Assembly: GCA_950097015.1 (NCBI GenBank)
Contig: CATNEN010000005.1
Span: 4,712,001-4,776,000 of the forward strand
Source: Macrostomum hystrix
Taxonomy: Eukaryota; Animalia; Platyhelminthes
Length of the DNA stretch: 64,000 bases
Reading direction: 5' to 3'
Both the position numbers and the translations under genes were made by a program. Shown piece by piece: positions 32,548 through 64,000 of the stretch (position 1 is the stretch's first letter; each line of letters starts with the position of its first letter). The notes under the pieces were generated by a model, which was not told the origin of the DNA, made no database searches, and worked only from the letters and a program-made list of their open reading frames with translations.

Positions 32548-35500
32548 TCACTTCTTGTAACCGCGACCAGTGCCCAAGTGGCCATAGTGCAGCCACTGGC
32601 TGAACAGGTCGTGTCCTGTCACGCCGCCAGGCATCGGTGAAGAATCGTGAGACGCATGAGTAAGCCTGATGACGCCGACACCGCCGCCTAGCCGTCTGGA
32701 GTTCATACTGCCGTAGGATTTCCAACAATTGCAATCGGAATCGTAGATTTCAACGGTTTTCAAATAGGTCGATCCGTCGAAGCCGCCGATGGCCATTAAT
32801 TGATTATTGACTACGGCTAGGCCTACACCGCTTCGTCTGGATGTCATGGCAACCACAGGGCGCCAACAATTCAGCTTAGGATCGAAGCACTCGGCGCTAG
32901 ATAATTCCGTGGTGTCGTCTCGCCCGCCGACACTGTAGATGCAGCCGTTGAATACGGCGACGCCCAGGTGCTTGCGACGAGTGGTCATGCTGGCTACCTG
33001 GCTCCAACGATTCGCTCGCGGGTCATAGCTGCCAGTGTGAAATGGAACGGCTATTTCACATCAGATCATGCCTGAGTGTCTTGGCAACCTTTGTCTAGCA
33101 ATATCAACTACCGGTTTATCTACCCTCTCTACTACCTGTTTATCTACCCTCTCTACTACCTGCTTATCTACCCTCTCTACTACCTGTTTATCTACCCTCT
33201 CTACTACCTGCTTATCTACCCTCTCTACTACCTGCTTATCTACCCTCTCTACTACCTGTTTATTAACCCTTTCTACTACCTGTTTATCTACCCTCTCTAC
33301 TACCTGTTCATCAACCCTTTCTACTACCTGTTTATCTACCCTCTCTACTACCTGTTTATCTACCCTCTCTACTACCTGTTTATCTACCCTCTCTACTACC
33401 TGTTTATCAACCCTTTCTACTACCTGTTTATCTACCCTCTCTACTACCTGCTTATCTACCCTCTCTACTACCTGTTTATCTACCCTCTGTACTACCTGTT
33501 TATCTACCCTTTCTACTACCTGTCTATCAACCCTTTCTACTACCTGTTTATCTACCCTCTCTACTACCTGTTTATCTACCTTCTCTACTAACTGTTTATC
33601 TACCCTCTCTACTACCTGTTTATCTACCCTCTCTACTACCTGTTTATCTACCTTCTCTACTACCTGTTTATCTACCCTCTCTACTACCTGTTTATCAACC
33701 CTCTCTACTACCTGTTTATCTACCTTCTCTACTACCTGTTTATCTACTCTTCAATTTCTCTTTTTCCTCTACAAAATGAAACAAGCCGAACAGTGCGAAT
33801 TCTCGCTGTACTCACCGTTCCACAGTGTGCAGCGGTTGTTGACCATCTGAACCGCCAACAGCGTACAGAATACCGTCCAATACGGCAACGCCAACGCCAA
33901 GTCTCCTAGTGCACATGCTGGCTACTCTAGTCCATCGATTAACACCTGGATCGTATCGTTCGACGTAGTTTAAACAGGAGACACCGTCTTGACCGCCAAC
34001 GGCGAACATTGCACCGTCTAGCACGGCTACGCCAACCGAGGTGCGGCATGAACTAGTTGGGGCAACATCGGCTGACCATTGGTTGGTGTGAGGATCGTAC
34101 CTGGTTGGAGGTGGGGTGAGCTGTTTTTGTGTCAGAGAATCGAAGATCTACAAAACTAACCCACAAAAAAATCGAAGATCTACAAAACTAACCTAGTAAA
34201 AAATCGACGATCTACAAAACTAACCTAGTAAAAGAATCGACGATCTGCAAAACTAACTTAGTAAAATAATCGACGATCTGCAAAGTTAACCTAGTAAAAA
34301 ATCGACGATCTACAAAACTAACCCACTAAAAAATCGACGATCTGAAAAACTAACCTAGTAAAAATCGACGATCTACAAAACTAACCCAGTAAAAAAATCG
34401 ACGATCTGCAAAACTAACCTAGTAAAAGAATCGACGATCTACAAAACTAACCCACTAAAAAATCGACGATCTACAAAACTAACCCACTAAAAAATCGACG
34501 ATCTACAAAACTAACCTAGTAAAAAATCGACGATCTACAAAACTAACCTAGTAAAAAATCGACGATCTACAAAACTAACCGAGTAAAAAATCGACGATCT
34601 ACAAAACTAACCTAGTAAAAAATCGACGATCTACTAAAACTAACCTAGTAAAAAATCGACGATCTAAAAAACAAACTTACTAGAGAGCCGACGATCTACA
34701 AAACAAACTCACTAAAGAGCCGACGATCTACAAAACAAACTCACTAAAGAGCCGACGATCTACAAAACAAACTCACTAAAGAGCCGACGATCTACAAAAC
34801 AAACTCACTAAAGAGCCGACGATCTACAAAACAAACTCACTAAAGAGCCGACGATCTACAAAACAAACTCACTAAAGAGCCGACGATCTACAAAACAAAC
34901 TCACTAAAGAGCCGACGATCTACAAAACAAACACAAAAAAAATGGGCGAACTACACAACTAAACCACTGAAAAATCCTTGAAATACAGAATTAGGTGTTC
35001 AAAAAAAACGGGAGGAAAGGCATAAAAGACTTGCAGCAGACAAACCTCTCCACCGAATTGAGATAGCTTTGGCCGTCGTGACCGCCAACAGCGTACATGA
35101 GGTCGCTAAGAACGGCCACCCCCACGCCGCAACGTCGCTTATTCATTGGAGCAACAAGTCGCCACTCCCCGCCAGACGGGGTAGGGTCAAATCGTTCCAC
35201 AGTGTTGATGGCGTCGCCGGAACACCAGCCGCCAACGGCGAATAGAACCTCGCCGCATCGCAACGGCTTCCTTGGCCGGGTCCTCGGGCCCTGCATCAAC
35301 GGCCGCTCCTGAGGCAGCAGGAGGTAGTTCTTGGCTTCGTCGACTAGATCGCGGCATTGGTCGCTGCCGCGAATTAGCAGGTCTGTTCCGACTGTGTTAA
35401 CTAGGAATTTCGGCGACATCTGCATGGGACATTGGTATCGATTGTGAATGATTAAGTTATTAAAAATAATATTATAGCCTCTTATAATGGACTACTAAGG

Positions 35501-37452
35501 ATTTTATAAAAATACTTCAGGTTCCAGAAAACTGACTATTCATTGCCAAATATTTCATGTCTCTAAAAACAATCAAGGACGTTTTCATATCTTTCAGGTC
35601 TCTGATAACTGAATATTCAGGATTTTCTAAATCCTTCAGGTTCCTCATGAACATACTAATCAGGTTTTTTCTAAAAATCGTTCAGGTAAATAATAAGAGA
35701 CTACTCAGGATTATACTAAATTCTTCAGGCCCCTCATAATGGACTATTCAGGATTATACTAAATTCTTCAGGCCCTCATAACAGACTATTCAGGATTATA
35801 CTAAATTCTTCAGGCCCTCATAACAGACTATTCAGGATTATACTAAATTCTTCAGGCCCTCATAACAGACTACTCAGGATTATACTAAATTCTTCAGGCC
35901 CTCATAACAGACTATTCAGGATTATACTAAATTCTTCAGGCCCTCATAACAGACTACTCAGGATTATACTAAACTCTTCAGGCCCCTCATAACAGACTAT
36001 TCAGGATTATACTAAATTCTTCAGGCCCCTCATAACAGAATATTCAGGATTATACTAAACTCTTCAGGCCCCTCATAACAGACTATTCAGGATTATACTA
36101 AATTCTTCAGGCCCCTCATAACAGACTATTCAGGATTATACTAAATTCTTCAGGCCCCTCATAACAGACTATTCAGGATTATACTAAATTCTTCAGGTCA
36201 CTCATAATAGACTATTCAGGATTATACTAAATTCTTCAGGTCCCTCATAAAAGACTATTCAGAATTATACGAGTACTAAACTCTTCAGGTCCCTTATAAC
36301 AGACTACTCAGAATTTGCCTTTTTCATTCAGGTTCACGATTTTGCTCAGTTTGAGGCTAAACCTTCAAAGGTTTAGCCTGTACAAATGTACAAAGAAGCC
36401 TGAGGTGTGGCACTTACCTGAGGCATCCGTACGTGCGACAGTACCAGAGCCAAATGCTGTCTCCTCTCTGGCAGATTGTGCCTAACCCAAGCCATAACGG
36501 CCTGATATACTTGTTCCTCGTTGCGCACATTCAATTCGTCCGATCCGATCATATCGATCAGCTGATTAACTGGCAGAAGTAGAAATTCTTCAGACTCGGT
36601 GACGTCAACAAAATTGTACTGAGCGAATCGTTCGGCAACTTTTAATAATTCCCTGCAGGCGTGCGTGTCGGCAAATGCTCGAATGCCCAGACAGTTGCTA
36701 GGGTCTAACTGGCGCTTGAGGAACTCGCAGCACACGTCTTGAATCTCTTGCAATTGCAACAGGCACGCGGCTGGCAATAGTGTTTGAACATTGGACTCTT
36801 CGACTGTGATGTGAGCAGTGTAGCAGAATTCTACAAGGCTCTCAACTGCCGACTCGTCCATATCTCGCAGCGTCACTTCCTGTTGACGACTTTCGGCCAG
36901 TTCGCCTGTAAACATGGCTCTGAAATACGGCGAGCCGGCTGCCAGAACAGCTCGATGGGCGTGGATTCGACGACTGCCAACCAGTAGGGCCACGTCGCAC
37001 AGCTCCTGCGGGTGGGAACAGACAACCTGGGTATTGCTTCTCTCCCTTCCTCTCTCACTTGCTTCTCTCCATTCCATCTCTCACCTGCTTCTCTCCCTTC
37101 CTCTCTCACCCTCTACTCTCCCTTCCTCGCTAACCTTCTCTCCCTTTTACTCTTACCTGCTTCTCTCCCTTCCTCTCTCACCCTCTACTCTCCCTTCCTC
37201 TCTAACCTGCCACTGACCTCTTTTGCGTCGCCCTCGCCAGGTTCTTTCCACTCCTTTTCCCCAGTCCCTCATCCAGACCTGCTGTCTGCGCATCCAATGC
37301 AAGGCGTCCAAACTAGCTCTTGGATGCCGCTCGGACTGATAGTGCAGTCGACTGCTCGGCGAGCTGGCACCTCTACCGCCTGCTCCTGTGCCGCCGCCAA
37401 CACCACCACTGCCACTGCCAGAGGTGTCGCCCATGCCAATGTCCACCTCCAT
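32548..37452 (-). CDS. KLHL20: Kelch-like protein 20 / diablo (BTB-BACK-6xKelch CUL3 adaptor), 5 exons, ~633 aa
   Basis: Exons 37452-37279, 37005-36418, 35419-35046, 34100-33816, 33028-32548; phases 0,0,2,2 are consistent with GT-AG borders. Diagnostic strings: [81 protein letters not shown]. Confidence 0.95.
33112..33750. repeat. Minisatellite, 24-bp unit CTACTACCTGTTTATCTACCCTCT (KLHL20 intron 4)
   Basis: About 26 tandem copies. Confidence 0.95.
34137..34932. repeat. Minisatellite, ~32-bp unit around CGACGATCTACAAAAC with two sub-types (KLHL20 intron 3)
   Basis: Sub-type A (AAAATCGACGATCTACAAAACTAACCTAGTAA) to ~34670, then sub-type B (AAAGAGCCGACGATCTACAAAACAAACTCACT). Confidence 0.92.
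35690..36312. repeat. Minisatellite, 42-43-bp unit CATAACAGACTATTCAGGATTATACTAAATTCTTCAGGCCCCT (KLHL20 intron 2)
   Basis: About 14 tandem copies; the unit contains two TTCAGG halves. Confidence 0.93.
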
Positions 37453-38470
37453 TCTAGCTGAACACTCAGTGTTTGATGTCAGGTCTAAGTTTTTTAATGC
37501 GGTAGTTAAAAAATATGTCAAGTCAATTACTTTTTTGACAAATTTTTAAGAATTTTTTAAATGGTCACTATTGTTAAACTTTAATGCAATAAAATACAAA
37601 TAGAAGTTGTGTTGTACATCCAGCCCTTTAAACTGATTTTGTAGTTAGCTAGTCAAACTTGCTTATTTCCAACCGTTGTTTTGCTTGGCTCAATGGATCT
37701 TATAAATATGTTCAAAGCAAATCCACAGATTACCTTTTGTAAGTTTAGGTGAGATTTAATTCTATTTTGAATGTTTTAAAGCAAATCTAGTAATTTTTAA
37801 ATAGTTTATAAAGTAAATAACTAGATCTTTTGATGACATAGCAAAGATTAAGGTATATTAGCAAAATTATAGCATAGAAGGAACCCAATCAATCAGATCA
37901 GAACCCAACCAAATCAAACTTGAGATTAAACTGCTTTTTAGTTTTTAAGGCTATCAAACAATAATTATACTTAAAAAAGTAACACAAAATATAACTTTGG
38001 TAAAGCTGATGTCACATATCACATAAATGTGTCTACTTTCTATATTTTCAAATTATTTTCAAAAGATTAAAAATGAATACTAAATAGACTACTCAAAAGT
38101 ATTATAATCTTTAATGATTACTTAGGCCTATATTTTTCTTATTTGCAACAAAGAAGTACTTCTGACAATAAATGTAAACAGCACATAATGTATATATAAT
38201 CACCTATGCACACTTATATTGGCTAATTTGTGATTAAAGACCAAAATTAATTTACAATTAAGATTTGTATTATTGCTCTATTAATGAGTATAAGTAATAA
38301 TAACAGTAAATATAGTATATATAATCTACTTTTATATAGTATATAATGGATATATTGTATTTTATTATAGTGATAGGCCTACCAAACCAATTTAGGTAGA
38401 TTTACAGAAAAATATGGAAAGTTATCATGTCAAAAAACCATATTAGGGGTTGGACAAGATCCCAATTTTG

Positions 38471-41282: not shown

Positions 41283-42672
41283 GTGCTACAGACTAACCAT
41301 ACAGATGAACCCTTCAGACTGCTACAGACTAACCCTGCAGAGTGCTACTACAGACTAACCCTACAGAGTGCTACAGACTAAACCTGCAGAGTGCTACAGA
41401 CTAAACCTGCAGAGTGCTACAGACTAACCCTACAGAGTGCTACAGAATAACCCTACAGTATGCTACAGACTAACCCTACAGAGTGCTACAGACTAACCCT
41501 ACAGTAGGCTACAGACTGACCCTAAAGAGTGCTACAGACTAACCCTACAGTATGCTATACAGACTAAACCTGCAGAGTGGTACAGACTAACCCTACAGAG
41601 TGCTACAGACTAACCCTACAGAGTGCTACAGACTAACCCTACAGTATAACAACAACAACAACAACAACAACAAAGTCTGCTAAACCTGCAGACTAACCAT
41701 ACAGATGAACCCTTCAGACTGCTACAGACTAACCCTGCAGAGTGCTACAGACAACCCTACAGTATAACAAAAACAACAACAACAACAACAAAGTCTGCTA
41801 AACCTGCAGACTAACCATACAGATGAACCCTTCAGACTGCTACAGACTAACCCTGCAGAGTGCTACAGACAACCCTACAGTATGCTACAGACTAAACCTG
41901 CAGACTAACCCTACAGAGTGCTACAGACTAAACCTGCAGAGTGCTACAGACTAAACCTGCAGAGTGCTACAGACTAACCCTACAGAGTGCTACAGAATAA
42001 CTCTACAGTATGCTACAGACTAACCCTACAGAGTGCTACAGACTAACCCTACAGTAGGCTACAGACTAATCCTACAGAGTGCTACAGACTAACCCTACAG
42101 TATGCTATACAGGCTAAACCTGCAGAGTGCTACAGACTAACCCTACAGTATGCTATACAGACTAACCCTACAGAGTGCTACAGACTAACCCTACAGTATG
42201 CTATACAGGCTAAACCTGCAGAGTGCTACAGACTAACCCTACAGTATGCTATACAGACTAACCCTACAGAGTGCTACAGACTAACCCTACAGTATGCTAC
42301 AGACTAACCCTACAGAGTGCTACAGACTAACCCTACAGTATGCTACAGACTAACCCTACAGTATGCTACAGACTAAACCTGCAGACTAACCCTACAGAGT
42401 GCTACAGACTAACCCTACAGAGTGCTACAGACTAACCCTACAGTATGCTATACAGACTAAACGTACAGAGTGCTACAGACTAACCCTACAGTATGCTACA
42501 GACTAAACCTGCAGACTAACCCTACAGAGTGCTACAGACTAACGCTACAGACTAACGCTACAGTATGCTACAGACTAAACCTGCAGAGTGCTACAGACTA
42601 ACCCTACAGTATGCTACAGACTAAACCTGCAGACTAAACCTACAGACTGCTACAGAAGAACCCTACAGAGTA
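41283..42672. repeat. Minisatellite, ~23-bp unit GACTAACCCTACAGAGTGCTACA with embedded (AAC)n blocks
   Basis: Variable tandem array ending ~150 bp upstream of the channel ATG. Confidence 0.93.
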
Positions 42673-42820
42673 CCCTACGAGCGGTACAGAGTTAGCTAAA
42701 TTTCCTGTTAAAAGCTTCTACATCAATTTCTTGATGTTAAAGCTTCTACGAAAATTTCTTCTGTCTAATGCAATATTTTAGAGATATCTAGGCTGTCAAA
42801 GGTTCGCCGTTGATCCAGAA

Positions 42821-45800
42821 ATGCTGCTGTATGAAAGGCTTCAACAGGCTATTCGAGCAGAAGACGAGACCAGCCAGGCGAGCCTGATCGACAAGATCAA
42901 ATCAGGCATTCGGTCAGCTGAGAATATATGCGACCCCGAGGTGGCCCACGCGGTGCTTACCTCGGCCACGGATGAAGATCTCACTGTGCTGCAACTCCTC
43001 CTGACACAGCTCGGCTCCGACTGCCTTCTAGTACAGAACGCCGATAATGACACCATCGTCCACATCGCTGCTCGATTGCAAGGCGTTCTCAACGGACCGG
43101 CCGCGCTAGAGATGATGACGGAACACCTGGGCTTCGACTGTCTGCGCTTGGAAGGCTTCAAGAGTCGCAAAGCGGTGCACTGCGCCGCGTGGAATCGGAA
43201 CAGCCCGGCGGCCCTCCTCTGGCTCCTCGACCGGCTGGAACCGCGCGAGTTTACTGATGAAGCGGACGACGAGAACTTCACCGCCTTGCAGTATGTGTTC
43301 GCTATTCAAGACACCAGAACACTGCAGGCTCTGGCTGAGAGGCACAACGGGCTCTACTTGCGAGTCAGAGGCGAAGCCAACAGGACCGCGTTTCACATGG
43401 CAGCGATGAACGAGGAGAGCTCGACAGAGGCAATCATGTGGCTCATCTGCACGCAACAAGAGGCTGAGAACTTTTTGCGGCCGGATGCCAAAGGAGACAC
43501 TCCGGTACACCTGGCTTTCTGGAAGCAAGACGCGTCGGTTGTGAAGACGTTGATTGACAAGCTCGGGGCTGACTGCCTCAATCTACAAGGCGAGCACGGG
43601 CGTACAGCTGCACACTATGCGACACTAAACGACATCAACCACGGCCCGATGCTCTGGCTGCTGGAGACGCAAGATCCGCAAATATTCAGTCAAGCCGACG
43701 CTAATGGCGACACTGCGGTGCATCTGGCCTTCTGGAAGCAATGCGGAACCACAATTAATGCACTTGTAGATAAACTGGGCGTTGATTGTCTACAATTAAG
43801 AGGCGAGAGGGGGCGCACAGCTGCTCATTACGCAGCTCTTAACGATAGAAGCTCAAGCGCGTTGCTCTGGATCATCGCGACGCAGGACAGAGCGATTCTG
43901 CGAACGCCAGATTACAATGGTGACTGCGCCTATCACCTGGCGTTCTGGAAACAAGACGCTCACGTGGCGATGGCGCTTGTTAGCAGACTGGGCAAAGAGT
44001 GCCTGAGATTGCCAGGAGGAAAGTACAAGCGCATTGCGGCGCACTACGCGGCGCTCAATGAACGCAGCGCTAGTACGCTATTGTGGCTGATCGACAACCA
44101 CGATTCGCGCATGTTTCACACGGCAGACGCTGAAGATACAACTGCACTTCACTGGGCCTTTAGAAACCAGACGGCCGATGTTGTAGCTAGACTGGTCGCC
44201 AAGGCTGGCTGGGGACGTCTAAGAGTACAGTTGGAGAACAAGCAGACGGCGGCTCACTTTGCAGCGCTTAATGAGCGCAGCCCTAGCGCGCTGTACTGGC
44301 TTATGGACACCCTGGAGCCCGAGATCTTTCTGACTGGAGTCGAGAAGACAAGCACAGCGATGCACCTGGCTTTTAAGGCGCAAACAGTGGAAACTTTGCA
44401 ACGCTTGGTTGCGAAACTCGGCGTGGACTGTTTGAACCTACCTGGCTTCAAAGGACGCACAGCATTGCACTACGCTGCACTCAACGAGAGAAGCCCGAGC
44501 GCACTGTTGTGGCTGATTGAGAATCTTGAACCGAAGGTGCTGGTAACCCCAGACGCTAATGGAGATACCGCCGTCCACTTGGCATTTCTGAAGCAGGGCG
44601 TCCAGGTGGCAGAATTGCTAGTTAATAGGCTCGGTATCGACTGCTTCAGTATTCGAGGAGGAAAGTATCAGCGCACCTTGGCACACTATGCCGCCAACAA
44701 TGAAAAATCACCTGAGGCGCTGTTGTGGCTCATCGCTAATCACAGCCCGCAGTTGTTCTTCAGCCGTGACACTGACGGCGCAACAGCGTTGCATATCGCA
44801 TTGTTAAAGCAAGACGTTAGCACTGTGGCAAAGCTAGTGCACAAGGTTGGCATCGACGCTCTCGGACTTAAAGGCTACCGAGCTCGCACAGCAGCGCACT
44901 ACGCTGCTCGCAACGAGAGATCAGAGGGCATGCTAGCTTTTGTCTTTGAGTGCGCTCGAGAGTCGGGATCGCTACTGGAAGTTCTCAGATCGCCTGACGA
45001 TGATGGCAGGACTTGCCTGCACGTTTGCACATTGAATCGAGCGCACGGAGTGCCAATGTTCGAGCGGACCTATCCAATGTTTGGACTCTCCGATAAGTCT
45101 GATCCACTAAAGTTGACGGACAAGGATGGCAGGAATCCACTCTTCATAGCCTGTCTGGCTAAGAATTTCAACTTCTTTCATGCGCGCTACATCGACTTGC
45201 GCAAGCACCAGTGCATAGATAAGGACGGCAATACCCTGCTGCACGCCCTGTTTCTCACGCTTGATCCAAGAGTGCGCTTCAGATTTTCAATTGGACAGCT
45301 GGTCATTGTTGCCAAGCAGCTCATCGAAGCAGGCGTTGATTATACCGCCGAGAACAAAGCAATGCGAAACTGCCTGCTAGCCTCAGAGCTTGATGAGGAC
45401 AATCTCAGGTCCATTCTAAAGCGCATCTCGCAGCCCGAACTGAAGAAAGCATTCAGCAAGTTGCAGAGAAACTCGGAAGGAATCCACGCTGTCCACGTGT
45501 TCAGCAGTCGATACAGCATCCCAAATCTTGAGAAGTTGCTCAGTAGATTGTGCGATCTAAGCTCCAGTCAGCTACTGACAATTGGTGTCTCTGATGGACC
45601 GATGAAGGATGCCACTTGTCTACACTTTGCAAGCGAAGCCGGTCACAGAGAGAACATCAGCTATATTCTAAGCCGAGGCCTCAAGCTGTCGGACCAAACT
45701 GTCTCTGGTCAGACTAGCATGGACTTCGCGTGTCAGAGCGGCAAGCTGCACACGCTGTGTGAAGTGGCGGTTTCATGCGGAGTAGACCTGAGCGATGTGC

Positions 45801-48800
45801 TCCGATTGGTAGATCCGACACGGCGTGCCCTGCCTCTGCCGGACAAACAGAGCGCTCGGAATCTGCTCACCCTGTTCTCAGACTTGACTCTGCGCTCCAA
45901 TATCGAGAGAAATCGCAGCTCGCAGCGGATGGTGGACACGGCCGGGAAGCAGACTTCGCCAGGCGAATCACCGGAGGTCCAGATTCTCTACCGAGCTCTG
46001 GAGCTCGATTCGAGTCAAATGCTTCGCAGCTTAATAGTCGCCGGCTTCGCTACTGAAGACATGCGCGACCAGGTAATCAAGTACATTCTAAGACGACAAG
46101 AGGACGTTTCAGAGGCTCAGCTGCGAAGAAACTTTAAGGATTTAGATAAGTTTAGGATGCTGTCGATCGACTTTATAAGTCACTTGTCGCTTATTGAATG
46201 CGCTATTTTCTTTGAGAAGCCAAAGCTTCTAAATGACCTGATGCTTCTGCCACAGTTTGACATCATACCAGAGACACTGCGCTTATTGATCCATCTGAGG
46301 CCGAAGGTTGAGCTGATGAGAAATGAGCAGCTGAGGCGAGTTAGAGACAAGGCACTGAATGTTTTGATCAACGTGCTGGAGCACTTATGTGTTAATGCTC
46401 ACGCCACAGAGCGAAGACTCTTATTCAAATACTTGACGGCCAACTTTACGGACGCTGAAAATGTAGCTGGACCGAAGTTCGCCCGGCCAGTGCCTGTGAT
46501 AGCGGATGACGATGCCGAGGAGACGGACAGCGACGATGACGAGCTCGGCCAGGAAGGCAAAGTGCTCAAGCAGCTCAAGCGACACTCCAAACAGGCTAAA
46601 CGTCTTGAGCAGAAAAGCAAAGCTGAAAAGCTTAAGTTCATGTCGATTATGGACATGGTGGAGACTTTAGACTGCGACGACCTATACGGCACGGAATGTA
46701 TCAGCCAGCTCGTGGAAAGGCAGTGGCGAAAGCCACCGCCGCTGCCATGGGACCAAGGCGTCCAGGTGCAATGCAGCGCTTTCAACAAGCGATCCCAAGT
46801 GTCAGTTGAGCAGAGGTTCATCATTTACTTTATCTTCTACATCGTCTATTTAGTATTCTTCGCTTGGTACGTGACCGACTTTAAAAGAAATACAGAAAAT
46901 TCTGCCGCGGATGTAGTTCTGCTGATGTACACGCTGTCACTTTCGCTTCAAGAGTGGGAAAATGTGTTGAACAAAAGTAATATTAAGGATGTCTACATCA
47001 GACAAAGAAGATTTCATGTGCCCAGATATTTTACGGATCTGTTTAATTACTTTGACATCAGCGGTCTAACGCTAATGTGGGTAGGACTAGTTCTCAAACT
47101 GCTCGGCCGTTTGATAGACCTAACCCTACTTCGAACTTGTCACGTAGTCCTGAGCACCTCATTCTTGCTAATGGCATTCCGCTCTGTCGCTCTGCTCAGC
47201 TACTTCCGTGTGACCGGACCAAAGATCTGCATCCTCAAGTGTCTGATATTCAAGGACCTATTGCCGTTTCTGCTGATCATGCTAGTTCTAGTCTACTCAT
47301 TCGGTGTGTTCTTCTTTAATCTGCTGTTCCCAGCCATCTCCAATGGGACGGATGCACAACCGCTGACAATGATCTTCACGCTTCCTGTGTGGCTGCTGTT
47401 TGGCATGTTCGACAATGCCCAATTTGTGTCGTGTAACTCTAGCGGCCTGGCCAGCGGCTCGGATTGCGCAGATTCCGCCGGCAACAGAGTCTACAACGGC
47501 ATCCTATTGTTCTTCTATCTGATGATTGTCAATCTGGTCATGTGGAATCTGTTGATTGCTCTGTTTAACTACACTGTTAGCCAGATGGCCAGCAAGGCGG
47601 AGGGTCTGTGGCGCAAGAACCTATTCGAGCTGCTGCAGGAGTTCTCGGAGATTAGCGCCATACCGCCGCCGTTCTCGTTCCCCTACTACGCGTGGAAGCT
47701 GCTGAGAAGATTTCCGTGCTTTCTGGCTGTGCCACCATTGCCAGAAGAGGAAGAGGCCGAGGTAAGTGTATCAAATGATGATATTGACTGCAGATGGGCT
47801 GAGGACACTGGCAGAACCACCACTTAATGACATTATACCCGAAGCCAGTGGGAGGCAATTTAGCCCATTCTGCTTAACCTAAGCGCACATTCACTCTGAC
47901 AGGTGTCACATCTGCCCAGACTTTCTCATCATCAGGCAAGAGTGGAGGTTAGCTTCTAAGGGTTAAATTGGGTGAATAGCCCCCAAGCCTTCTCTATACT
48001 CGTAAATGTTATTACGCTCGTATTTGCAGAAATCGAACAGCACTGCCAAGTATTGGTGGCAAAACCGGTCGACGTTTGCGAACTATCCGGATGGCTATAG
48101 GAAATTCCTCATCTACCAGGCGGAGCAGCTGCGGCGATACCGAGCTCAGCTTCGTCGCTCGGTCGAACGGCATCGCGATGACGCCGACACTCTGAAAGCG
48201 CACATGGAGAACCAACTGGCCGAGACTAGCGAGGATGTGCGCCGAGAGCTGCGTGAACAACTCGGCAACCTGGAGGCGGACGTCAAGGCTCAGATCAGCA
48301 GACTGGAGCTAGACGTTGCGAATAGCATCGGCAGGTTAGATGCGGGATTGTCGGAGCAAATGATCAGAGTAGAGAGTATTAAACGAAATGTTTGTCGTCT
48401 AGTCGAAATGCTTGGAGTAAAACTGGACGAAACACATCGACAAAGGAAAGCATCGTCCGATGAACTGGGCGTACCAGTCTTTCAAATGAAAGCATCGAAT
48501 GCTCGACTAGATGCACCCGGGGCCGTTGATCAATCAGCAGGATCAAATGATCGATCGGAAGTATCGATTGATCAAACGGAAAAATCAACCCTACCGTTTG
48601 AAGTGACTATCGATCAAACAGATGGATCTAATTATCGAGCGAAAGTACAAGCACTAGAGCAGGACGCATCGAATGTGCAGTCCGAAATACTAATCGAAAA
48701 ACATCGCGCACTGCAAGTACAATCAGCAGGCAGTTCTCTTACAGAACCGGAAGTTGCCCCTGTGCAGCCCCAAGCGCGGCGGGTTAAACCGGAAGCGCTT

Positions 48801-48935
48801 CTACCACAAAGTCAGACCGAAGTATTGCACGTAGAGCATATTTCATTGTTAAAGAAGGAGAGAATGCAACTGCAGGTAACAGATCGTTCGCCTTCCTCTG
48901 CCTCGTTTGCGTCCAGTCATCGAGCAGGCCAGTGA
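42821..48935 (+). CDS. Ankyrin-repeat TRP cation channel with a TRPM-type 6TM/pore/TRP-helix module and C-terminal coiled coil, 2 exons, ~1948 aa
   Basis: Exon 1 42821-47761 (GAG|GTAAGT) joins in phase 0 to exon 2 48030-48935 (TTGCAG|AAA). About 25 ankyrin-like repeats (e.g. GDTAVHLAF, GRTAAHYAA). S1-S6 region includes YFTDLFNYFD, GPKI...KDLLPF, PVWLLFG, a pore-loop Cys pair, NLLIALFNYT, LW...ELLQEF...IPPPFS, followed by heptad-rich helix. An additional upstream exon cannot be excluded (TCCAG|AAATG). Confidence 0.88.
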
Positions 48936-50848: not shown

Positions 50849-53800
50849 TTAACAAACACCGCGACGAGTGCGCACCTGACGAATTGTCGGTTGCGTCTCC
50901 TTAGCAACCTTTGCCTTCGCTGTGGCGTCCTTAGCGACGAAAGGTGTCTCCTTCGGAGCGCCGCGCTTTGACGTGGCCCTGGAGCTGGCAGCTGCGGCGA
51001 CGATGAGAGCCTCGTCAGCAACCGCGGCGGCGGCACGCTTTGCGCGAGCACCGGCCACAGCAACCGATGAAGTGTCCTTAGCAACCGCCTTCGTAGCAAC
51101 GCGACGCGGCTTTTTAACTGGCGAAGCGGCCATGTCAGTTTCAACATCAACGACAGCAGCCGCACGCTTGCCACGTCCTCCAACGCGAGTTGTTGTCGTC
51201 TTGACAGCGGCAGCGTCCTTAGCAACGGGCATTTGAGGTTCAGATGATGCCGTCACCTTGGCGGCGCATCGACGAGGTTTCTTAGACTCAATCGCAACAA
51301 CTGCTGGAGATAGTTCTACTTCAGTTGATTCTGTCAGCGCTTGACGCTTCCTGCGACCAACTGGCGCAGCGTCCTTAGCAACAGTGTCAACCGACTTAAC
51401 AGTTGTTTCTTTAATTGGCTGCTTACGAGCTCGAGTAGCCTTCACAGTCTGAGTCGGGACAATCTCTAATTTACCAATCGACTTGCGCTCTCGCCTCGAT
51501 ACGACCCTAGCAACCGGACTAGCGGCCTTGACAACCTTGGCCTTGACAATAGGCGAGGTGGGTTCCAAAGCGACCGCTTTCTTGGCACGCCCACGCTGAG
51601 GTCTCTTGGGCTCTTCAACGGCTGCCGTGACAATGGCGGCTCGCCTAACTCGACTAGCTGTTGAGTCTTGCTCAGCAACCAAAGAGTCCTTGGCAACCTG
51701 AGAGTCTACAACAACTGGCGCATCGTTGGCAACAGATTTCTCGATAGTTTTATTTGTTGCGTCGCGCCTAGCATTTCTAGCGGGCGCCTTGTAGCTAATT
51801 TTGATGCCAGCTTCAGCCTGGATGGCGTCAGTGGCCAAAATGGCTGCGCGGCGTGTCGATCTCCCAGCGACGCCAGATATCAGTGGTTCGGCCACTTCGA
51901 AGATAACAGCGTTAGCCGCTTCTGCAGTTGGCTTCTTTGTCTGAACGACTTTTCTTCGCAAATTAATCTTTGACGTTGTTGAATCTATAACGGTATCAAC
52001 TGATTTAGCGTCATTAGAAACGACATCTGGCACCTCGGCGCTAACGGGCTTCCTTCGCGAGGCGTTCCTAGCAGTCGCGGTGGCAGAAGCGCCATTGGCA
52101 ACCTGAGTTGTCGGCTCAACGTCAACATCATTAGAAGCTGCGGTAGCTTTAGCTGGTGCTTTATGACGCGAAGCAGCCTTCTTGACGGTGGCTGTCTCCT
52201 TAGGGATGATCGCAGCTTCCATAGCAACGCTAGCTTTAGATTCTACTTTGGCTTTATTGCGTCGCGACGCTACCTTAGTAACGGCCTTAGCAACTATGGC
52301 AGGCGCTTCAGTTACGACTGACATAGCAACGGAATTGACTGTTTGGGTGCTATTAGAGTCAGAAACCTGCTCCGCATCTCCTCTTTTTGTCTTTAGTTCA
52401 TCAGCTACAGAGTTAAGGACTTTTTTAATAATTTGTTCGCCTGGGGCACTGCTAGATGTGACTTTGGAATTTGACTGTCTCAGCGGAGACGAACTTGTTG
52501 AAGAAGAGCGACCTCTGTTTTCGTCCGCCGCATTTGCTTCGTTTTCTCTATCGACCGTAGCGTTTTTGGCTTTGACGTTGCGACTACGCTTACGAGGATT
52601 GGCTCGGTTACGCGTCGATGACGAAGCGGTAGCCGCAGGAGCAGCTGCAGCAGATTCTAAAGCGTCAGCAACAGATTTTGTAGCCTTTTGACTTTCGCTT
52701 GGTGTCATTTTGGGTTTAGGTTTTTTCTGAGCGACTGGTGTCTTAGCTGGCGTCTTCTCAGCGACAGGTGTCTTGGCTGGCGTCTTCTCAGCCACAGGTG
52801 TCTTCGCTGGCGTCTTCTCAGCGACTGGTGTCTTCTCAGCGACAGGTGTCTTGGCTGGTGTCTTCTCAGCGACAGGTGTCTTGGCTGGTGTCTTTTCAGC
52901 GACAGGTGTCTTGGCTGGTGTCTTCTTAGCGACAGGTGTCTTGGTTGGCGTCTTCTCAGCCACAGGTGTCTTGGCTGGTGTCTTCTCAGCGACAGGTGTC
53001 TTGGCTGGTGTCTTCTCAGCGACAGGTGTCTTCGCTGGCGTCTTCTCAGCGACAGGTGTCTTGGCTGGTGTCTTCTCAGCGACTGGTGTCTTGGCTGGCG
53101 TCTTCTCAGCGACAGGTGTCTTGGCTGGCGTCTTCTCAGCGACAGGTGTCTTCGCTGGCGTCTTCTCAGCGACAGGTGTCTTGGCTGGCGTCTTCTCAGC
53201 GACTGGTGTCTTGGCTGGTGTCTTCTCAGCGACAGGTGTCTTCGCTGGCGTCTTCTCAGCGACAGGTGTCTTCGCTGGCGTCTTCTCAGCGACAGGTGTC
53301 TTGGCTGTTGTCTTCTCAGCGACCGGTGTCTTAGCGGGTGTATTATGTGACGTTTTTCTTTCTCTAGAAGCCCCGCGGTCATCGTCAGCGTCAGGGACCT
53401 CGTCAGTGACCGCAGCGGTGCCGCTATCGGTCACCAGGATCTGCCATCTAGCATTGACAATAGCCGGCGCCCTAGACGAGTGCGCCGCTGCTGCGAGGCC
53501 TCCGCCAAAGCTTCTAGCGCGCGATTCGCCGGCACCTGTACGACGTCGCTTAGTAGACGGTGCGGTCAATCGACGCTGCCTTTTTTTAATTGGCTTAGTC
53601 TGCTCCAGCTGATTGTCTACTAGGCCAGTAGCCAATACGACTGGCGAGTCAAACAGCTGCGGCAGGCCAGAATCGCTGGCAATCGAAAGATTATTATTTC
53701 TGCGATTGGAGCTAGACAGACGGGCAAGCTTAGCCGGCGGCGGTTGCACTGTTGTGGGCGCCTGGCGTCGTTTGCCAATAACAATGGTCGGCGGTGACAA

Positions 53801-55389
53801 AGCGTGACCAGTTGAAGCGGCGCCGGCCTGTCTAACGGCTACTGGGGTTTTGTTAGACCGACGACCGGCCATAGATCGGGAACGCTTCTTTCCCTGCTTC
53901 TTTTTATTCCACCAGCTGGTTGCGCTGCCAGATTTCGGCGCAACTCCTCTTGGCATTGGGCCGGCTACGCTTTGCAAAGCCATCGCGAAGGTCAGCTTAA
54001 CTGCCGGCTGTAAGGTGGCATAAAAAGCAAGGATTATTTCTTTTGAACCTTTTGAAATACAGTAACGACGAGCCTCTCTTCTATTTTACCTACAATAGTA
54101 ATAATTAATAACTATTCTGCCCTAATCGGATCGGATGTGCAACCGACAGCAGTCCGTGGACTGTGGTGAGGCCATTAACACAGCTAATGCTGGTACCTAT
54201 TTAACACCTGGGTGAATTTAGTTAAGTCTTGCTAAAATGACACATTTTTCTAGTAGAGTCGGGAATCGAACCTCCGACCTTCAAATCATGAGTTCGAGGC
54301 TCTTAAATATCAACTAGAATCGATTTCTACAAGTATCGTACATTGGGCCTACCTGATATCACTTTTTTCCCATAATAGGACACTTCTTATAGTTTATCAT
54401 AAATAAGCAGGACTTACCCCAGATGCTCTAGGCCTAGCTGCAGCTGTCGAAGATCTACGAGCGCCAGTCGAAGCCCTGCTAACAGTGGCCGGTGATTTAG
54501 TTGCCATAGCAACCACAGCTGACGTTCCATTAGCCAAAGCAACAGCAACAGGCTTAACGGGCGTCAGAACAACAGGCGCCTTGCTTAGCATAGCAACCAC
54601 ATTCGAGTTATTCGCCGAACTAGCCACCGGCGTCTTAGTAACCTTAATCACTGTTGGCGATTTAGTTGCCGTGGCAGCCGGTTTAGGCGAAGCCTGCGCG
54701 CCGAATGCGCGTCTAACTAGAATAGATTTGCGCAGTGTAGATCTCGGAAGCGGATCAGCTGGATTGCCAGCTGGCGGCTGAGCCGCAGGCGAGTGCAGCT
54801 GCTGCGCCCAAGTCATGCGTTTCTTGCGCAACACTGAGGCTGGAGTCGGACAGTCGCCGACATTGGCCGGAGCCTGCGACGTTGTTGGTGGCGCCGGCGG
54901 TGGAGTTTGCCTCGTTGAATCGCTGCTAGCAGAGACGGCAGCTATAGCGGCAGAAGGTGAAGCTTCCACACTTCGACGATTAGTTTTATGAACGATGGCT
55001 TTAGGTCGGATAATAAGGGTTGGTGGCGACAATGCGTGCCCAGTTGACAAGGCGCCAGCCTGACGAACAGCTATGGGAGTTTTGGCTCTATCAGCCAAAT
55101 TGCCAATAGGTCGATAGCTAGATCGACGCGTTGCATTACGCCTTGGCGGCTGCTTGTGATGCCTCTGGCGCCAGATTTCATTATTAGTAGTTTCGGTGGA
55201 ACTCTTTGATGTAGTTGTTGAAGCCAGTTCACCCTGCGGCATGGGACCAACTATGCGCTGCAGAGCCATTGCATAAGTAATCTTAGGCATTGGCACTGGC
55301 TGACCAGATGAATTGCGCTTACTTTTAGAGATGGATAATGACAGACGCTGCTGCTGCTGTTGCTGCTGAGGCTGAGTTTGGGCAATCAT
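50849..55389 (-). CDS. Large basic Ala/Lys/Arg/Thr-rich low-complexity protein of unknown function, 2 exons, ~1376 aa
   Basis: Exon 1 55389-54418 (GGG|GTAAGT) joins in phase 0 to exon 2 54007-50849 (TTACAG|CCG), fusing the ORFs 54397-55389 and 50849-53983. Exons are GC-rich against AT-rich flanks. No recognisable folded domain. Confidence 0.75.
52722..53340 (-). repeat. Coding 30-bp tandem repeat, (TPAKTPVAEK) x ~20
   Basis: In-frame repeat inside exon 2; unit variation is mostly synonymous, and one shortened 18-bp unit keeps the frame. Confidence 0.92.
54093..54306 (-). mobile_element. Second, degenerate copy of the tRNA-derived SINE family, inside the intron of the basic protein gene
   Basis: Minus strand reads GGTTCGATTCCCGACTC (B box, 54272-54262) ... 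TGTGTCATTTTAGCAAGAC ... TTCACCCAGGTGTTAAATAGGTAC ... CAGTCCACGGACT ... GCTGTCGGTTGCACATC ... ATT-rich tail. This is collinear with 6980-7295 apart from an internal deletion. Confidence 0.75.
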
Positions 55390-62687: not shown

Positions 62688-62894
62688 CTAGGTAAATCAA
62701 TAATTAAAGAATACTTACTTTTCATTTCCAGTTGAATAATGTCAATCAGCGAATCGATCATTCAGTCGGTCATAAAACATTTGGTCATTCAGTCGGTGAG
62801 TCATAAACCAAACAAATCACGAGGAACGTGATTGGTCATTCAGCTAGGGATCATTTGGTCATTTTAATGCTGGATCAAGTCTGTGGGTTAAAAC

Positions 62895-64000
62895 CTCTGG
62901 TCATTTAGTTGGTGGGTCATAAACCTTGGTCAATTAGTTGGTGGGTCATAAACCTTGGTCATTTAGTTGATGGGTCATAAACCTTGGTCATTTAGTTGGT
63001 GGGTCATAAACCTTGGTCATTTAGTTGGTGGGTCATAAGCCTTGGTCATTTAGTTGGTGGGTCATAAACCTTGGTCATTTAGTTGGTGGGTCATAAACCT
63101 CTGGTCATTTAGTTGGTGGGTCATAAGCCTTGGTCATTTAGTTGGTGGGTCATAAACCTTGGTCATTTAGTTGGTGGGTCATAAACCTTGGTCATTTAGT
63201 TGGTGGGTCATAAACCTTGGTCATTTAGTTGGTGGGTCATAAACCTTGGTCATTTAGTTGGTGGGTCATAAACCTTGGTCATTTAGTTGGTGGGTCATAA
63301 ACCTTGGTCATTTAGTTGGTGGGTCATAAACCTTGGCCATTTAGTTGGTGGGTCATAAACCTTGGTCAATTAGTTGGTGGGTCATAAACCTCTGGTCATT
63401 TAGTTGGTGGGTCATAAACCTTGGTCATTTAGTTGGTGGGTCATAAACCTTGGTCATTTAGTTGGTGGGTCATAAGCCTGGGTCATTTAGTTGGTGGGTC
63501 ATAAACCTTGGTCATTTAGTTGGTGGGTCATAAACCTTGGTCATTTAGTTGGTGGGTCATAAACCTTGGTCATTTAGTTGGTGGGTCATAAACCTTGGCC
63601 ATTTAGTTGGTGGGTCATAAACCTTGGTCAATTAGTTGGTGGGTCATAAACCTCTGGTCATTTAGTTGGTGGGTCATAAACCTTGGTCATTTAGTTGGTG
63701 GGTCATAAACCTTGGTCATTTAGTTGGTGGGTCATAAGCCTTGGTCATTTAGTTGGTGGGTCATAAACCTTGGTCATTTAGTTGGTGGGTCATAAACCTC
63801 TGGTCATTTAGTTGGTGGGTCATAAGCCTTGGTCATTTAGTTGGTGGGTCATAAACCTTGGTCATTTAGTTGGTGGGTCATAAACCTTGGTCATTTAGTT
63901 GGTGGGTCATAAACCTTGGTCATTTAGTTGGTGGGTCATAAACCTTGGTCATTTAGTTGGTGGGTCATAAACCTTGGTCATTTAGTTGGTGGGTCATAAA
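62895..64000. repeat. Minisatellite, 29-bp unit GGTCATTTAGTTGGTGGGTCATAAACCTT (runs off the window end)
   Basis: About 38 near-identical tandem copies. Confidence 0.96.

What the first reader, a model, noticed from the sequence alone, without database searches (positions are those of the whole stretch)
42821..48935. Chimeric TRP channel: about 25 ankyrin repeats fused to a TRPM-type pore and coiled coil
Seen: a long ankyrin array, a linker with an acidic patch, a complete S1-S6, and a C-terminal heptad region, with 4.9 kb on one exon. Established: GPKI..M..D..F, P...FG, the pore-loop Cys pair, NLLIA.F.YT and W...Y/F.LI.E....PPPF plus a tetramerising coiled coil are TRPM hallmarks, but canonical TRPMs carry MHR/SLOG domains and no ankyrin array. 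Long ankyrin springs typify TRPN and TRPA, and the EWKFAR box of TRPC/TRPN is absent here. Inference: a domain-shuffled, possibly undescribed TRP subfamily that could be a tether-gated or ligand-sensing channel. Best candidate for a novel system in this window.
Basis: partly seen in the sequence, partly recalled or inferred. Interest (0 to 1): 0.75.

Follow-up and report, generated by a model that had tools for sequence, protein, structure and literature searches.

The report
Long-ankyrin TRPM-like flatworm channel gene
This is an intact, strongly conserved gene of a Macrostomum flatworm for an ion-channel subunit that carries about 26 ankyrin repeats in front of a TRPM-type channel body. That layout is already published in shorter form for TRPM_MCLZ, the schistosome target of the drug meclonazepam, so it is an unusually long-armed, very diverged relative and not a new kind of channel.

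Summary
The gene has two coding exons (42821-47761 and 48030-48935, 1948 aa). It encodes an N-terminal cap, about 26 ankyrin repeats, a helical linker with an acidic patch, a TRPM-type S1-S6 with TRP helix, and a C-terminal amphipathic helix.

By sequence and by predicted fold the channel core matches TRPMs best, not TRPC, TRPN, TRPA or TRPV. It has no SLOG/MHR1-2 domain.

The novelty claim holds only in part. Ankyrin repeats on a TRPM-type core without SLOG are already published for the parasitic-flatworm channel TRPM_MCLZ (PMC10788528, PMC11731825, PMC12861061). I confirmed that those orthologues are among this protein's relatives.

This gene sits in a separate, fully supported clade. Its named members are all from Macrostomum lignano; the others are Logan contigs and one contig in a bacterial MAG. 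The clade has much longer ankyrin arrays, a linker Pfam no longer recognises, and only 24% transmembrane identity to TRPM_MCLZ. I found no paper describing it.

The gene is under strong purifying selection against its syntenic M. lignano orthologue (dN/dS about 0.06). The TRPM calcium-site residues are conserved.

Earlier agents of this scan reached the same TRPM_MCLZ reading for other paralogues in this genome. The tree could not be rooted.

The parts
42821..47761 (+). Coding exon 1 (1647 codons): cap helices, ankyrin array, linker, S1-S6, TRP helix
   Evidence: ORF. The orthologue aligns from Met1 at 77% identity. The donor GTAAGT is at 47762. The M. lignano first exon ends at the same position.
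42935..45775 (+). Ankyrin array, residues 39-985. It holds 20 regular repeats (39-755, built from a two-repeat unit of about 71 aa) and about 6 degenerate repeats (773-985).
   Evidence: Pfam Ank_2 1e-54. AF2 model at pLDDT 87.1 with 26 helix pairs. Best Foldseek matches are NOMPC, ankyrin-1 and AnkB. Model residues 1-220 of the second model match ankyrin-repeat proteins at Z about 13.
45836..46762 (+). Helical linker before S1 (residues 1006-1314). It has an MHR4-like fold but no family match by sequence.
   Evidence: No Pfam or PDB sequence hit. The fold aligns with MHR4 plus the transmembrane part of TRPM2, TRPM5 and TRPM7 at Z 19.7-21.4. hhalign gives 91.9% to the pre-S1 region of TRPM_MCLZ orthologues and 3.8% to canonical TRPM.
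46505..46549 (+). Acidic patch ADDDAEETDSDDDEL (residues 1229-1243)
   Evidence: Translation. It is shared with the orthologue P0001 but not with other paralogues.
46805..47650 (+). S1-S6, pore helix and TRP helix (residues 1329-1610). Includes the TRPM-type Ca2+ site E1378/N1381/N1409/D1412/E1607, the filter LFGMFD (1526-1531) and the pore-loop Cys1538/Cys1549.
   Evidence: PDB phmmer: TRPM2-like 6e-19, TRPM4 7e-16. AF2 helices. Column conservation across clades.
47762..48029 (+). Intron (268 nt, GT...AG, phase 0)
   Evidence: Sequence. The orthologue protein bridges it.
48030..48935 (+). Coding exon 2 (301 aa plus stop): C-terminal cytoplasmic tail
   Evidence: In frame with ORF 48006-48935. 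P0001 residues 1653-1929 align at 37% identity, E 3e-43.
48117..48431 (+). Amphipathic helical region with 11-residue periodicity (exon-2 residues 30-134); candidate assembly coiled coil
   Evidence: Periodicity test: 0 of 2000 shuffles reach the observed power. Weak Pfam apolipoprotein-type hits fit 11-mer repeats. This is the best-conserved part of exon 2.

Best explanation
The locus is a functional two-exon gene of a Macrostomum flatworm. It encodes one subunit of a tetrameric, TRPM-like, non-selective cation channel of the ankyrin-bearing flatworm group whose published member is TRPM_MCLZ.

Shown:
- The channel core (S1-S6, pore helix, TRP helix, PPPF turn) is TRPM-type by sequence and by predicted fold.
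- The usual TRPM SLOG/MHR1-2 sensor is absent. In its place are about 26 ankyrin repeats joined to the channel by an MHR4-like helical linker.
- All domains are under strong purifying selection.
- The five residues that bind Ca2+ in the S1-S4 cavity of TRPM2/4/5/8 are kept.

Inferred:
- The channel assembles as a tetramer, probably helped by the C-terminal amphipathic helix.
- It needs or is tuned by cytosolic Ca2+ at the conserved S2/S3/TRP-helix site.
- It is opened by a further stimulus acting either in the S1-S4 cavity, as meclonazepam does in TRPM_MCLZ, or through the ankyrin arm, which would serve as a docking platform or tether.

Its clade most likely arose within flatworms together with the TRPM_MCLZ clade from a TRPM-type ancestor, followed by tandem growth of the ankyrin array and fast divergence.
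For: Gene model and orthology:
- establish the model and the orthologue.
- Synteny with M. lignano scaffold NIVC01000100 covers the BTB-Kelch gene upstream and the repeat-rich gene downstream.
- dN/dS is 0.055-0.074 in the ankyrin, linker and transmembrane parts, with pS about 0.72, and the intron position is conserved.

TRPM-type core:
- PDB phmmer returned 64 hits at E <= 0.01. The 60 shown are all TRPMs plus crTRP1, with no TRPC, TRPN, TRPA or TRPV.
- The nearest ESM Atlas clusters are TRPM2-type.
- The AF2 model has pLDDT 84.6, and the Foldseek top 50 are all TRPMs.
- VIA-align gives Z 21.4-19.7 at rmsd 4.6-4.7 over 446-485 residues for TRPM2, TRPM5 and TRPM7. TRPC scores 18.3-18.6 and NOMPC 17.0.

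No SLOG: Pfam and my own SLOG HMM find none.

Link to TRPM_MCLZ:
- The papers describe ankyrin repeats in place of SLOG.
- P0212 carries H827, H831, Y864, E868, R943, H946, Y1038 and Y1117 exactly as published. P0214 has Y940 and P0211 has Y944.
- In the careful tree, the window clade plus the TRPM_MCLZ-containing clade lie on one side of a 100/97 branch against the SLOG TRPMs.
- The pre-S1 profile matches TRPM_MCLZ orthologues at 91.9% but canonical TRPM at only 3.8%.
- Every named ankyrin-bearing relative is a flatworm protein.

Ca2+ site: E1378, N1381 (D or E in most paralogues, Q in TRPMs), N1409, D1412 and E1607 sit in columns that are nearly invariant across all three clades. Their role is known from TRPM4, TRPM2, TRPM5 and TRPM8 structures (my own knowledge).
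Against:
- The tree is unrooted. Sisterhood with TRPM_MCLZ depends on the root lying among the SLOG TRPMs. Transmembrane identity is no higher to TRPM_MCLZ (24%) than to canonical TRPMs (26%).
- Pfam sees neither the TRPM2-like (MHR3/4) domain nor TRPM_tetra, and Ion_trans scores below its cut-off (21.9 against 25).
- The selectivity filter is atypical (FGM in place of FGE/FGQ) and varies among paralogues, so permeation cannot be inferred.
- Four of the residues named in the TRPM_MCLZ meclonazepam-pocket work differ.
- The C-terminal helix has hendecad, not heptad, periodicity, and its oligomeric state is unknown.
Confidence: 0.75

Rival explanations
1. A convergent NOMPC-like mechanotransduction channel. 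The array of about 26 ankyrin repeats would act as a compliant tether (gating spring) to the cytoskeleton, and force on it would open a TRPM-derived pore. On this reading mechanical force, not Ca2+ or a ligand, is the primary stimulus.
For: - The array length is close to NOMPC's 29 repeats, and NOMPC is the best Foldseek match of the array model.
- The array is as strongly constrained as the pore (dN/dS 0.055).
- Paralogues also carry long arrays: my ankyrin HMM counts 24 in P0004 and 21 in P0008.
- TRPN is reported absent from schistosomes (PMC5196486), which leaves a possible vacant role.
Against: - Long ankyrin arrays are also plain docking platforms. Ankyrin-1, AnkB and latrotoxin match almost as well.
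- There is no evidence of microtubule binding and no expression data.
- Whether Macrostomum itself lacks TRPN was not tested.
- The linker and TRP-helix contacts that carry force in NOMPC were not examined.
- Array length varies widely among paralogues.
Confidence: 0.15
2. An ancient lineage rather than a flatworm innovation. The ankyrin-bearing clades would branch before the SLOG domain joined the TRPM/TRPS ancestor, so the ankyrin array would be ancestral and nothing would have been 'shuffled'.
For: - The midpoint root falls between the window clade and everything else, although this is for drawing only.
- All other group-1 TRP families carry ankyrin repeats.
- Divergent ankyrin repeats are reported inside MHR3/4 (PMC13143021).
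- The transmembrane part is equidistant from TRPM_MCLZ and canonical TRPMs.
Against: - Every named ankyrin-bearing relative is a flatworm protein, so this reading needs losses in all other phyla.
- The long branch of the clade explains the midpoint position.
- The TRPM_MCLZ-containing clade keeps a clear MHR4 (hhalign 98.5-99.3% to canonical TRPM), as expected of a TRPM derivative.
- Himmel et al. infer an ankyrin-free, SLOG-linked TRPM-TRPS ancestor (PMC7306681).
Confidence: 0.1
3. An artefact: a pseudogene, or two adjacent genes (an ankyrin protein and a channel) that only look fused in the genome.
For: Several M. lignano database models of this family are fragments or fusions, for example P0009 with two channel cores.
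Against: - The ORF runs unbroken for 1647 codons across the ankyrin array, linker and channel.
- The syntenic orthologue has the same Met1, the same exon end and the same architecture.
- dN/dS is about 0.06 in every part.
- The same order of parts appears in about 20 paralogue clusters.
Confidence: 0.03

Closest known systems
TRPM_MCLZ (Schistosoma mansoni Smp_333650 and its trematode and cestode orthologues); 'TRPM-like' group of PMC12861061
   Same: - A flatworm channel with N-terminal ankyrin repeats instead of SLOG/MHR1-2, a TRPM-type S1-S6 and TRP helix, and cytoplasmic C-terminal helices.
- Few exons: 3 there, 2 here.
- It lies on the same side of the 100/97 branch against SLOG TRPMs.
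- The pre-S1 profiles match at 91.9%.
- The conserved S2 Glu, S4 Arg and TRP-helix aromatic residue of the drug pocket are kept.
   Different: - The clades are separate (100/100 for this one and 99/91 for the clade holding TRPM_MCLZ), with only 24% transmembrane identity.
- This protein has about 26 ankyrin repeats over about 950 residues. In the 1378-aa Dicrocoelium orthologue the best Pfam ankyrin matches all lie within about residues 130-330.
- Pfam does not recognise this linker as MHR4, whereas that of the TRPM_MCLZ clade matches canonical TRPM at 98.5%.
- Pocket residues differ: H827->Y, H831->Y, Y864->L, H946->A.
- This protein is 1948 aa against about 1380 aa.
Canonical TRPM channels (TRPM2/4/5/8/3/7; Pfam LSDAT_euk + TRPM2-like + Ion_trans)
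   Same: They give the best sequence and fold matches for the linker plus transmembrane part. Shared features are the Ca2+-site residues, the pore-loop Cys pair, the S6 NLLIA motif, the TRP-helix Trp and the PPPF turn.
   Different: - This protein has no SLOG/MHR1-2 and no detectable MHR3.
- True ankyrin repeats stand in their place.
- The TRP box reads WRKNLF, not WKFQRY.
- The filter is FGM.
- There is no TRPM_tetra match.
TRPN / NOMPC (Drosophila, PDB 5vkq)
   Same: A very long N-terminal ankyrin solenoid (29 repeats there, about 26 here), followed by a helical linker domain and a six-helix TRP channel. NOMPC is the best fold match of the array.
   Different: The channel core is not TRPN-like. 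There is no sequence hit at E <= 0.01 among the PDB matches shown, Z is 17.0 at rmsd 21 against 21.4 at rmsd 4.7 for TRPM, and there is no EWKFAR box. Nothing shows tethering.
Macrostomum lignano short-ankyrin TRPM-like paralogues (e.g. BOX15_Mlig012389g1, Mlig022043g1, Mlig030565g1)
   Same: They come from the same genus and have ankyrin repeats before a TRPM-type core. They are uncharacterised database entries.
   Different: They are 1100-1400 aa and keep a Pfam-detectable half of the TRPM2-like (MHR4) domain. They group with TRPM_MCLZ, not with the window clade.

Membership tests
Canonical TRPM | N-terminal SLOG domain (MHR1/2; Pfam LSDAT_euk) | tested here: not met
   No LSDAT hit at E <= 0.1. 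A SLOG HMM built from four TRPM hits finds nothing in this protein or in any paralogue of its clade.
Canonical TRPM | MHR3/4 (Pfam TRPM2-like domain) before S1 | tested here: inconclusive
   No Pfam hit. hhalign to canonical TRPM pre-S1 gives 3.8%. The predicted fold of residues 1018-1314 nevertheless superposes on MHR4 of TRPM2, TRPM5 and TRPM7 as part of Z 19.7-21.4 alignments.
Canonical TRPM | TRPM-type S1-S6 with the S2/S3/TRP-helix Ca2+ site, pore-loop disulfide pair and TRP helix followed by PPPF | tested here: met
Canonical TRPM | C-terminal tetramerising coiled coil (Pfam TRPM_tetra) | tested here: inconclusive
   No TRPM_tetra hit. A 105-residue amphipathic region with 11/3 periodicity is present. 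The oligomeric state was not tested.
Ankyrin-bearing flatworm TRPM-like channels (TRPM_MCLZ type) | Ankyrin repeats in place of SLOG on a TRPM-type core | tested here: met
   against the published description.
Ankyrin-bearing flatworm TRPM-like channels (TRPM_MCLZ type) | Common descent with TRPM_MCLZ to the exclusion of SLOG TRPMs | tested here: inconclusive
   The unrooted split {window clade + TRPM_MCLZ-containing clade | SLOG TRPMs} has 100/97 support. The pre-S1 hhalign is 91.9%. The clade is restricted to flatworms. No outgroup could be obtained, and transmembrane identity is no higher than to TRPMs.
Ankyrin-bearing flatworm TRPM-like channels (TRPM_MCLZ type) | Orthology to TRPM_MCLZ itself, with the meclonazepam pocket | tested here: not met
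   It forms a separate clade. Four residues named in the pocket work differ. Drug response cannot be tested here.
TRPN (NOMPC) | TRPN-type channel core and TRP box (EWKFAR) behind about 29 ankyrin repeats | tested here: not met
   The array length is similar, but the core matches TRPM and the TRP helix reads LWRKNLFELLQEF.
TRPA / TRPC / TRPV | Family-specific transmembrane core | tested here: not met
   None is among the PDB sequence hits shown. Fold Z values are lower or rmsd values much larger than for TRPMs.

The most novel reading that the evidence does not exclude
The window clade is a flatworm-specific family in which a TRPM-derived pore acquired a NOMPC-length ankyrin spring. It would then be an independent, convergent invention of a tether-gated mechanosensory channel in a phylum where TRPN is reported missing from schistosomes (not checked in Macrostomum), expanded to about 20 paralogue clusters (50% identity) in Macrostomum.
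Probability: 0.15. Interest if true: 0.7.

Novelty: new variant of a known kind. Interest (0 to 1): 0.42.

Why it matters
TRPM channels are usually defined by their SLOG/MHR N-terminus, and the TRPM-TRPS ancestor has been inferred to be ankyrin-free (PMC7306681). TRPM_MCLZ showed one exception and is an anthelmintic drug target.

This gene shows that free-living flatworms hold a second, much larger and far more diverged set of such channels, some with ankyrin arrays as long as NOMPC's. That bears on three questions:
- When and how the ankyrin-for-SLOG exchange happened.
- Whether the long arm confers tethering or mechanical gating.
- How the S1-S4 drug pocket of TRPM_MCLZ varies among its relatives.

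Macrostomum is a tractable laboratory animal (my own knowledge), so function could be tested there more easily than in parasites.

Tried and rejected
- **Membership in TRPC, TRPN, TRPA or TRPV:** rejected on sequence and fold.
- **Canonical TRPM membership:** rejected because SLOG is absent.
- **'Architecture unknown to science':** rejected after reading PMC10788528, PMC11731825 and PMC12861061 and matching published residue numbers to database orthologues.
- **Linker as a known sequence family:** there was no PDB hit even at E <= 10 and no Pfam hit. Only profile-profile and fold comparisons gave a signal.
- **Heptad coiled coil:** the 3.5 periodicity is not significant over the region; the 11/3 periodicity is.
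- **Rooting the tree:** no TRPC or TRPN sequence could be fetched by homology. They score too low against this core. A distant outgroup would also probably be drawn to the long branch of this clade, so I left the tree unrooted.
- **First ankyrin HMM:** built from this protein's own repeats, it under-counted repeats in distant relatives. I used Pfam instead for those.
- **Literature on Macrostomum TRPM-like channels with ankyrin repeats:** nothing specific found.
Full report
**The observation**

The finding's coordinates delimit two ORFs on the + strand: 42821-47827 (1668 aa) and 48006-48935 (309 aa). A word search of the channel part found 17 relatives. Sixteen are from Macrostomum lignano, and the best is BOX15_Mlig023275g1 (P0001, 1967 aa).

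P0001 aligns with the first ORF from Met1 at 77% identity, and with the second ORF from WWQN onwards. Where P0001 leaves the first ORF there is a consensus donor (GAG|GTAAGT, 47761/47762). Where it re-enters there is an acceptor (tttgcag|AAA, 48029/48030). Both are in phase 0.

The gene model is therefore exon 1 at 42821-47761 (1647 codons), a 268-nt intron, and exon 2 at 48030-48935 (301 codons plus stop), giving 1948 aa.

One local script concatenated the two translations for domain bookkeeping with hmmsearch. Every number quoted from it lies in exon 1, and later scripts used exon 1 alone.

**Where the window comes from**

The window is collinear with M. lignano scaffold NIVC01000100. A BTB-BACK-Kelch gene lies upstream, the channel gene in the middle, and a repeat-rich gene on the opposite strand downstream. 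Coding identity is about 74% at the nucleotide level. The window therefore comes from a Macrostomum relative and is not the deposited M. lignano sequence.

**Selection**

Against that orthologue, non-synonymous differences are 0.13 per site and synonymous ones 0.72 per site. dN/dS is 0.055 for the ankyrin array, 0.058 for the linker and 0.074 for the channel. The first exon ends at the same codon in both species. This is a working gene, and the ankyrin arm is as constrained as the pore.

**Anatomy**

| Part | Residues | Evidence |
|---|---|---|
| Ankyrin array | 39-985 | Pfam Ank_2 1e-54 and no SLOG. The AF2 model of residues 1-1010 (pLDDT 87.1) has two cap helices and then 26 helix pairs: 20 regular (39-755) in an alternating two-repeat unit of about 71 aa, and about six degenerate (773-985). 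Best fold matches are NOMPC, erythrocyte ankyrin-1 and the 24-repeat AnkB. |
| Linker | 1006-1314 | All-helical, with no sequence match in Pfam or PDB. |
| Channel core | 1329-1610 | Clear S1-S4, S4-S5 linker, S5, pore helix, S6 running into a TRP helix, and a post-TRP helix (model of residues 785-1647 built from a 57-row alignment, pLDDT 84.6, pTM 0.73). |
| C-terminal tail | exon 2 | Residues 30-134 of exon 2 are amphipathic with an 11/3 repeat (0 of 2000 shuffles reach it), not a 7/2 repeat. |

**Which TRP family**

By sequence, the region from residue 1131 matched 64 PDB sequences at E <= 0.01. The 60 shown are all TRPM2, TRPM3, TRPM4, TRPM5, TRPM8, TRPM1 or TRPM7, plus the algal crTRP1 (best 6e-19). 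No TRPC, TRPN, TRPA or TRPV appears among them.

By fold, the top 50 Foldseek matches are all TRPMs. In an exhaustive structural scan, TRPM2, TRPM5 and TRPM7 score Z 21.4-19.7 at rmsd 4.6-4.7 A over 446-485 residues, covering both the linker and the channel. TRPC scores 18.3-18.6 and NOMPC 17.0 at rmsd 21. The linker thus has the fold of TRPM MHR4.

Across 57 aligned relatives, these columns are nearly invariant (numbered in the window protein): the S2 Glu (E1378), the S3 Asn and Asp (N1409, D1412), the S4 Arg (R1454), the S6 NLLIA motif, and the TRP-helix Trp and Glu (W1597, E1607). The S2+3 position is N here, D or E in most paralogues and Q in TRPMs. From published TRPM2/4/5/8 structures (my own knowledge), E, Q, N, D and the TRP-helix E are the Ca2+ ligands of the S1-S4 cavity.

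The pore-loop Cys pair is present here, in 8 of 18 members of its clade, and in 17 of 17 of the TRPM_MCLZ-containing clade. The filter reads FGM and varies among paralogues.

**Relatives**

A profile of linker plus channel was scored against 1.84 billion representative proteins. It returned 1562 hits at E <= 0.001, in three tiers.

- **Tier 1** (about 45 hits above 175 bits) mostly matches linker and channel together; some are shorter fragments. Every named member is from M. lignano. The rest are Logan contigs and one 5.1-kb contig binned into a 'Kangiellaceae' MAG.
- **Tier 2** (about 95-150 bits) matches mainly the channel part and includes ankyrin-bearing proteins of 1100-1400 aa. These come from M. 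lignano, where they keep a Pfam-detectable half of the TRPM2-like (MHR4) domain, and from trematodes and cestodes (Opisthorchis, Dicrocoelium, Schistocephalus, and others).
- **Tier 3**, at similar scores, holds canonical SLOG-bearing TRPMs.

**What is already known**

Park et al. (JBC 2024, PMC10788528) identified Smp_333650 as TRPM_MCLZ, the meclonazepam-activated channel of schistosomes. They describe multiple ankyrin-like repeats in its N-terminus, three exons, and an earlier 'TRPM7-like' label.

The review PMC11731825 states that TRPM_MCLZ lacks MHR1/2 (SLOG) and has ankyrin-type modules instead. PMC12861061 suggests calling the group 'TRPM-like'.

I checked that my tier-2 parasite proteins are these orthologues:
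- P0212 (Schistosoma guineensis cluster) has H827, H831, Y864, E868, R943, H946, Y1038 and Y1117 at exactly the published positions.
- P0214 (S. turkestanicum) has Y940.
- P0211 (S. mekongi) has Y944, as published for S. japonicum.

The combination 'ankyrin repeats plus TRPM-type core without SLOG' is therefore described, and one member has been characterised electrophysiologically.

Neither Himmel et al. 2020 (PMC7306681), who infer an ankyrin-free TRPM-TRPS ancestor, nor the 2026 TRPM evolution paper (PMC13143021) mentions these channels. I found no paper on the free-living expansion.

**Where this gene sits**

A careful maximum-likelihood tree of S1 to TRP helix (65 rows, 328 columns, LG+C20) gives three groups meeting at one node:

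| Group | Support |
|---|---|
| Window clade | 100/100 |
| Clade of M. lignano short-ankyrin channels plus TRPM_MCLZ orthologues | 99/91 |
| SLOG TRPMs, together with a clade whose long N-terminus has no Pfam domain | 100/97 |

The tree is unrooted. If the root lies among the SLOG TRPMs, the two ankyrin-bearing groups are sisters and the ankyrin-for-SLOG exchange happened once in flatworms.

Three things favour that reading: the restriction of both groups to flatworms, the 91.9% profile match between the pre-S1 regions of the window clade and TRPM_MCLZ orthologues (against 3.8% to canonical TRPM), and the clear MHR4 kept by the TRPM_MCLZ-containing group (98.5-99.3% to TRPM).

Against it, transmembrane identity is 24% to TRPM_MCLZ and 26% to canonical TRPMs, and the branch to the window clade is long. 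I could not obtain outgroups, so this step remains an inference.

**Mechanism**

Shown:
- A TRPM-type voltage-sensor-like domain and pore.
- Conserved Ca2+-site residues.
- A constrained 26-repeat ankyrin arm joined through an MHR4-like linker.
- A C-terminal amphipathic helix.

Inferred:
- Tetramer assembly.
- Ca2+ as activator or co-agonist.
- A second stimulus acting in the S1-S4 cavity or through the arm. The residues named in the meclonazepam-pocket work are only partly kept: the S2 Glu, the S4 Arg and the TRP-helix aromatic are present, and four others are changed.
- A NOMPC-like tether role for the arm is possible but unsupported beyond length and shape.

**Relation to earlier notes of this scan**

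After I had reached the TRPM_MCLZ reading, a look-up showed that other agents had reached the same verdict for several paralogues elsewhere in this genome. First readers had also flagged further long-array copies 1.2-1.3 Mb away on the same piece. The scan has therefore found this family before on other DNA of the same genome.

**Verdict**

- The TRPM-type assignment is confirmed.
- The claim of a 'novel architecture' is not confirmed.
- The gene belongs to an undescribed, long-armed, highly diverged branch of a described flatworm channel type.

**Limits**

There is no rooted tree and no functional data.

Noticed in passing
window 1227-42678 and 61109-64000: The window holds more than 25 different minisatellite arrays. 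Units are mostly 17-32 bp, each array is 0.3-2.4 kb, and each has its own unit (for example 3008-4755, 9228-10867, 24780-27227). They fill much of the non-coding DNA and explain the strong local GC-skew swings. One array (41286-42678, 23-bp unit) ends about 140 bp upstream of the channel gene's ATG.
   Followed up: no
window 50849-53983 (-): A 1044-aa ORF with 30/60-nt in-frame tandem repeats (52725-53341). Its only Pfam hits are low-complexity ones (HC2, Extensin). It is collinear with a 1406-aa gene next to the M. lignano orthologue (L001:17777-23132).
   Followed up: partly
window 35044-37486: Blocks of 70-82% nucleotide identity to the BTB-BACK-Kelch gene that lies upstream of the orthologue in M. 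lignano (L001:1-7014). Gene order is therefore conserved around the channel gene.
   Followed up: partly
L002:42-4655 (GCA_036350755.1, JAZBNS010000602.1): A 5.1-kb contig binned into a 'Kangiellaceae bacterium' MAG carries one intron-free 1537-aa member of the window clade (P0016). It is almost certainly eukaryotic (flatworm-like) DNA mis-binned into a bacterial genome.
   Followed up: partly
P0111, P0117, P0140, P0144, P0094, P0106, P0127 (ENA contigs): A well-supported clade (100/100) has TRPM-type channel cores preceded by an 800-900-aa N-terminus with no Pfam domain at all. A weak MHR4 signal appears in only two members, and there is no SLOG and no ankyrin. The source organisms are unknown.
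   Followed up: no
P0009 (M. lignano, 2076 aa): This database protein contains two channel cores (residues 584-918 and 1598-1954). It probably represents two tandem paralogues merged into one gene model.
   Followed up: no
P0056 (Dreissena polymorpha, 1211 aa): A TRPM-like channel with an MHR4 match and a weak Mind-bomb SH3-repeat match in the N-terminus. Only a very weak match (12.6 bits) to my SLOG HMM was found.
   Followed up: no
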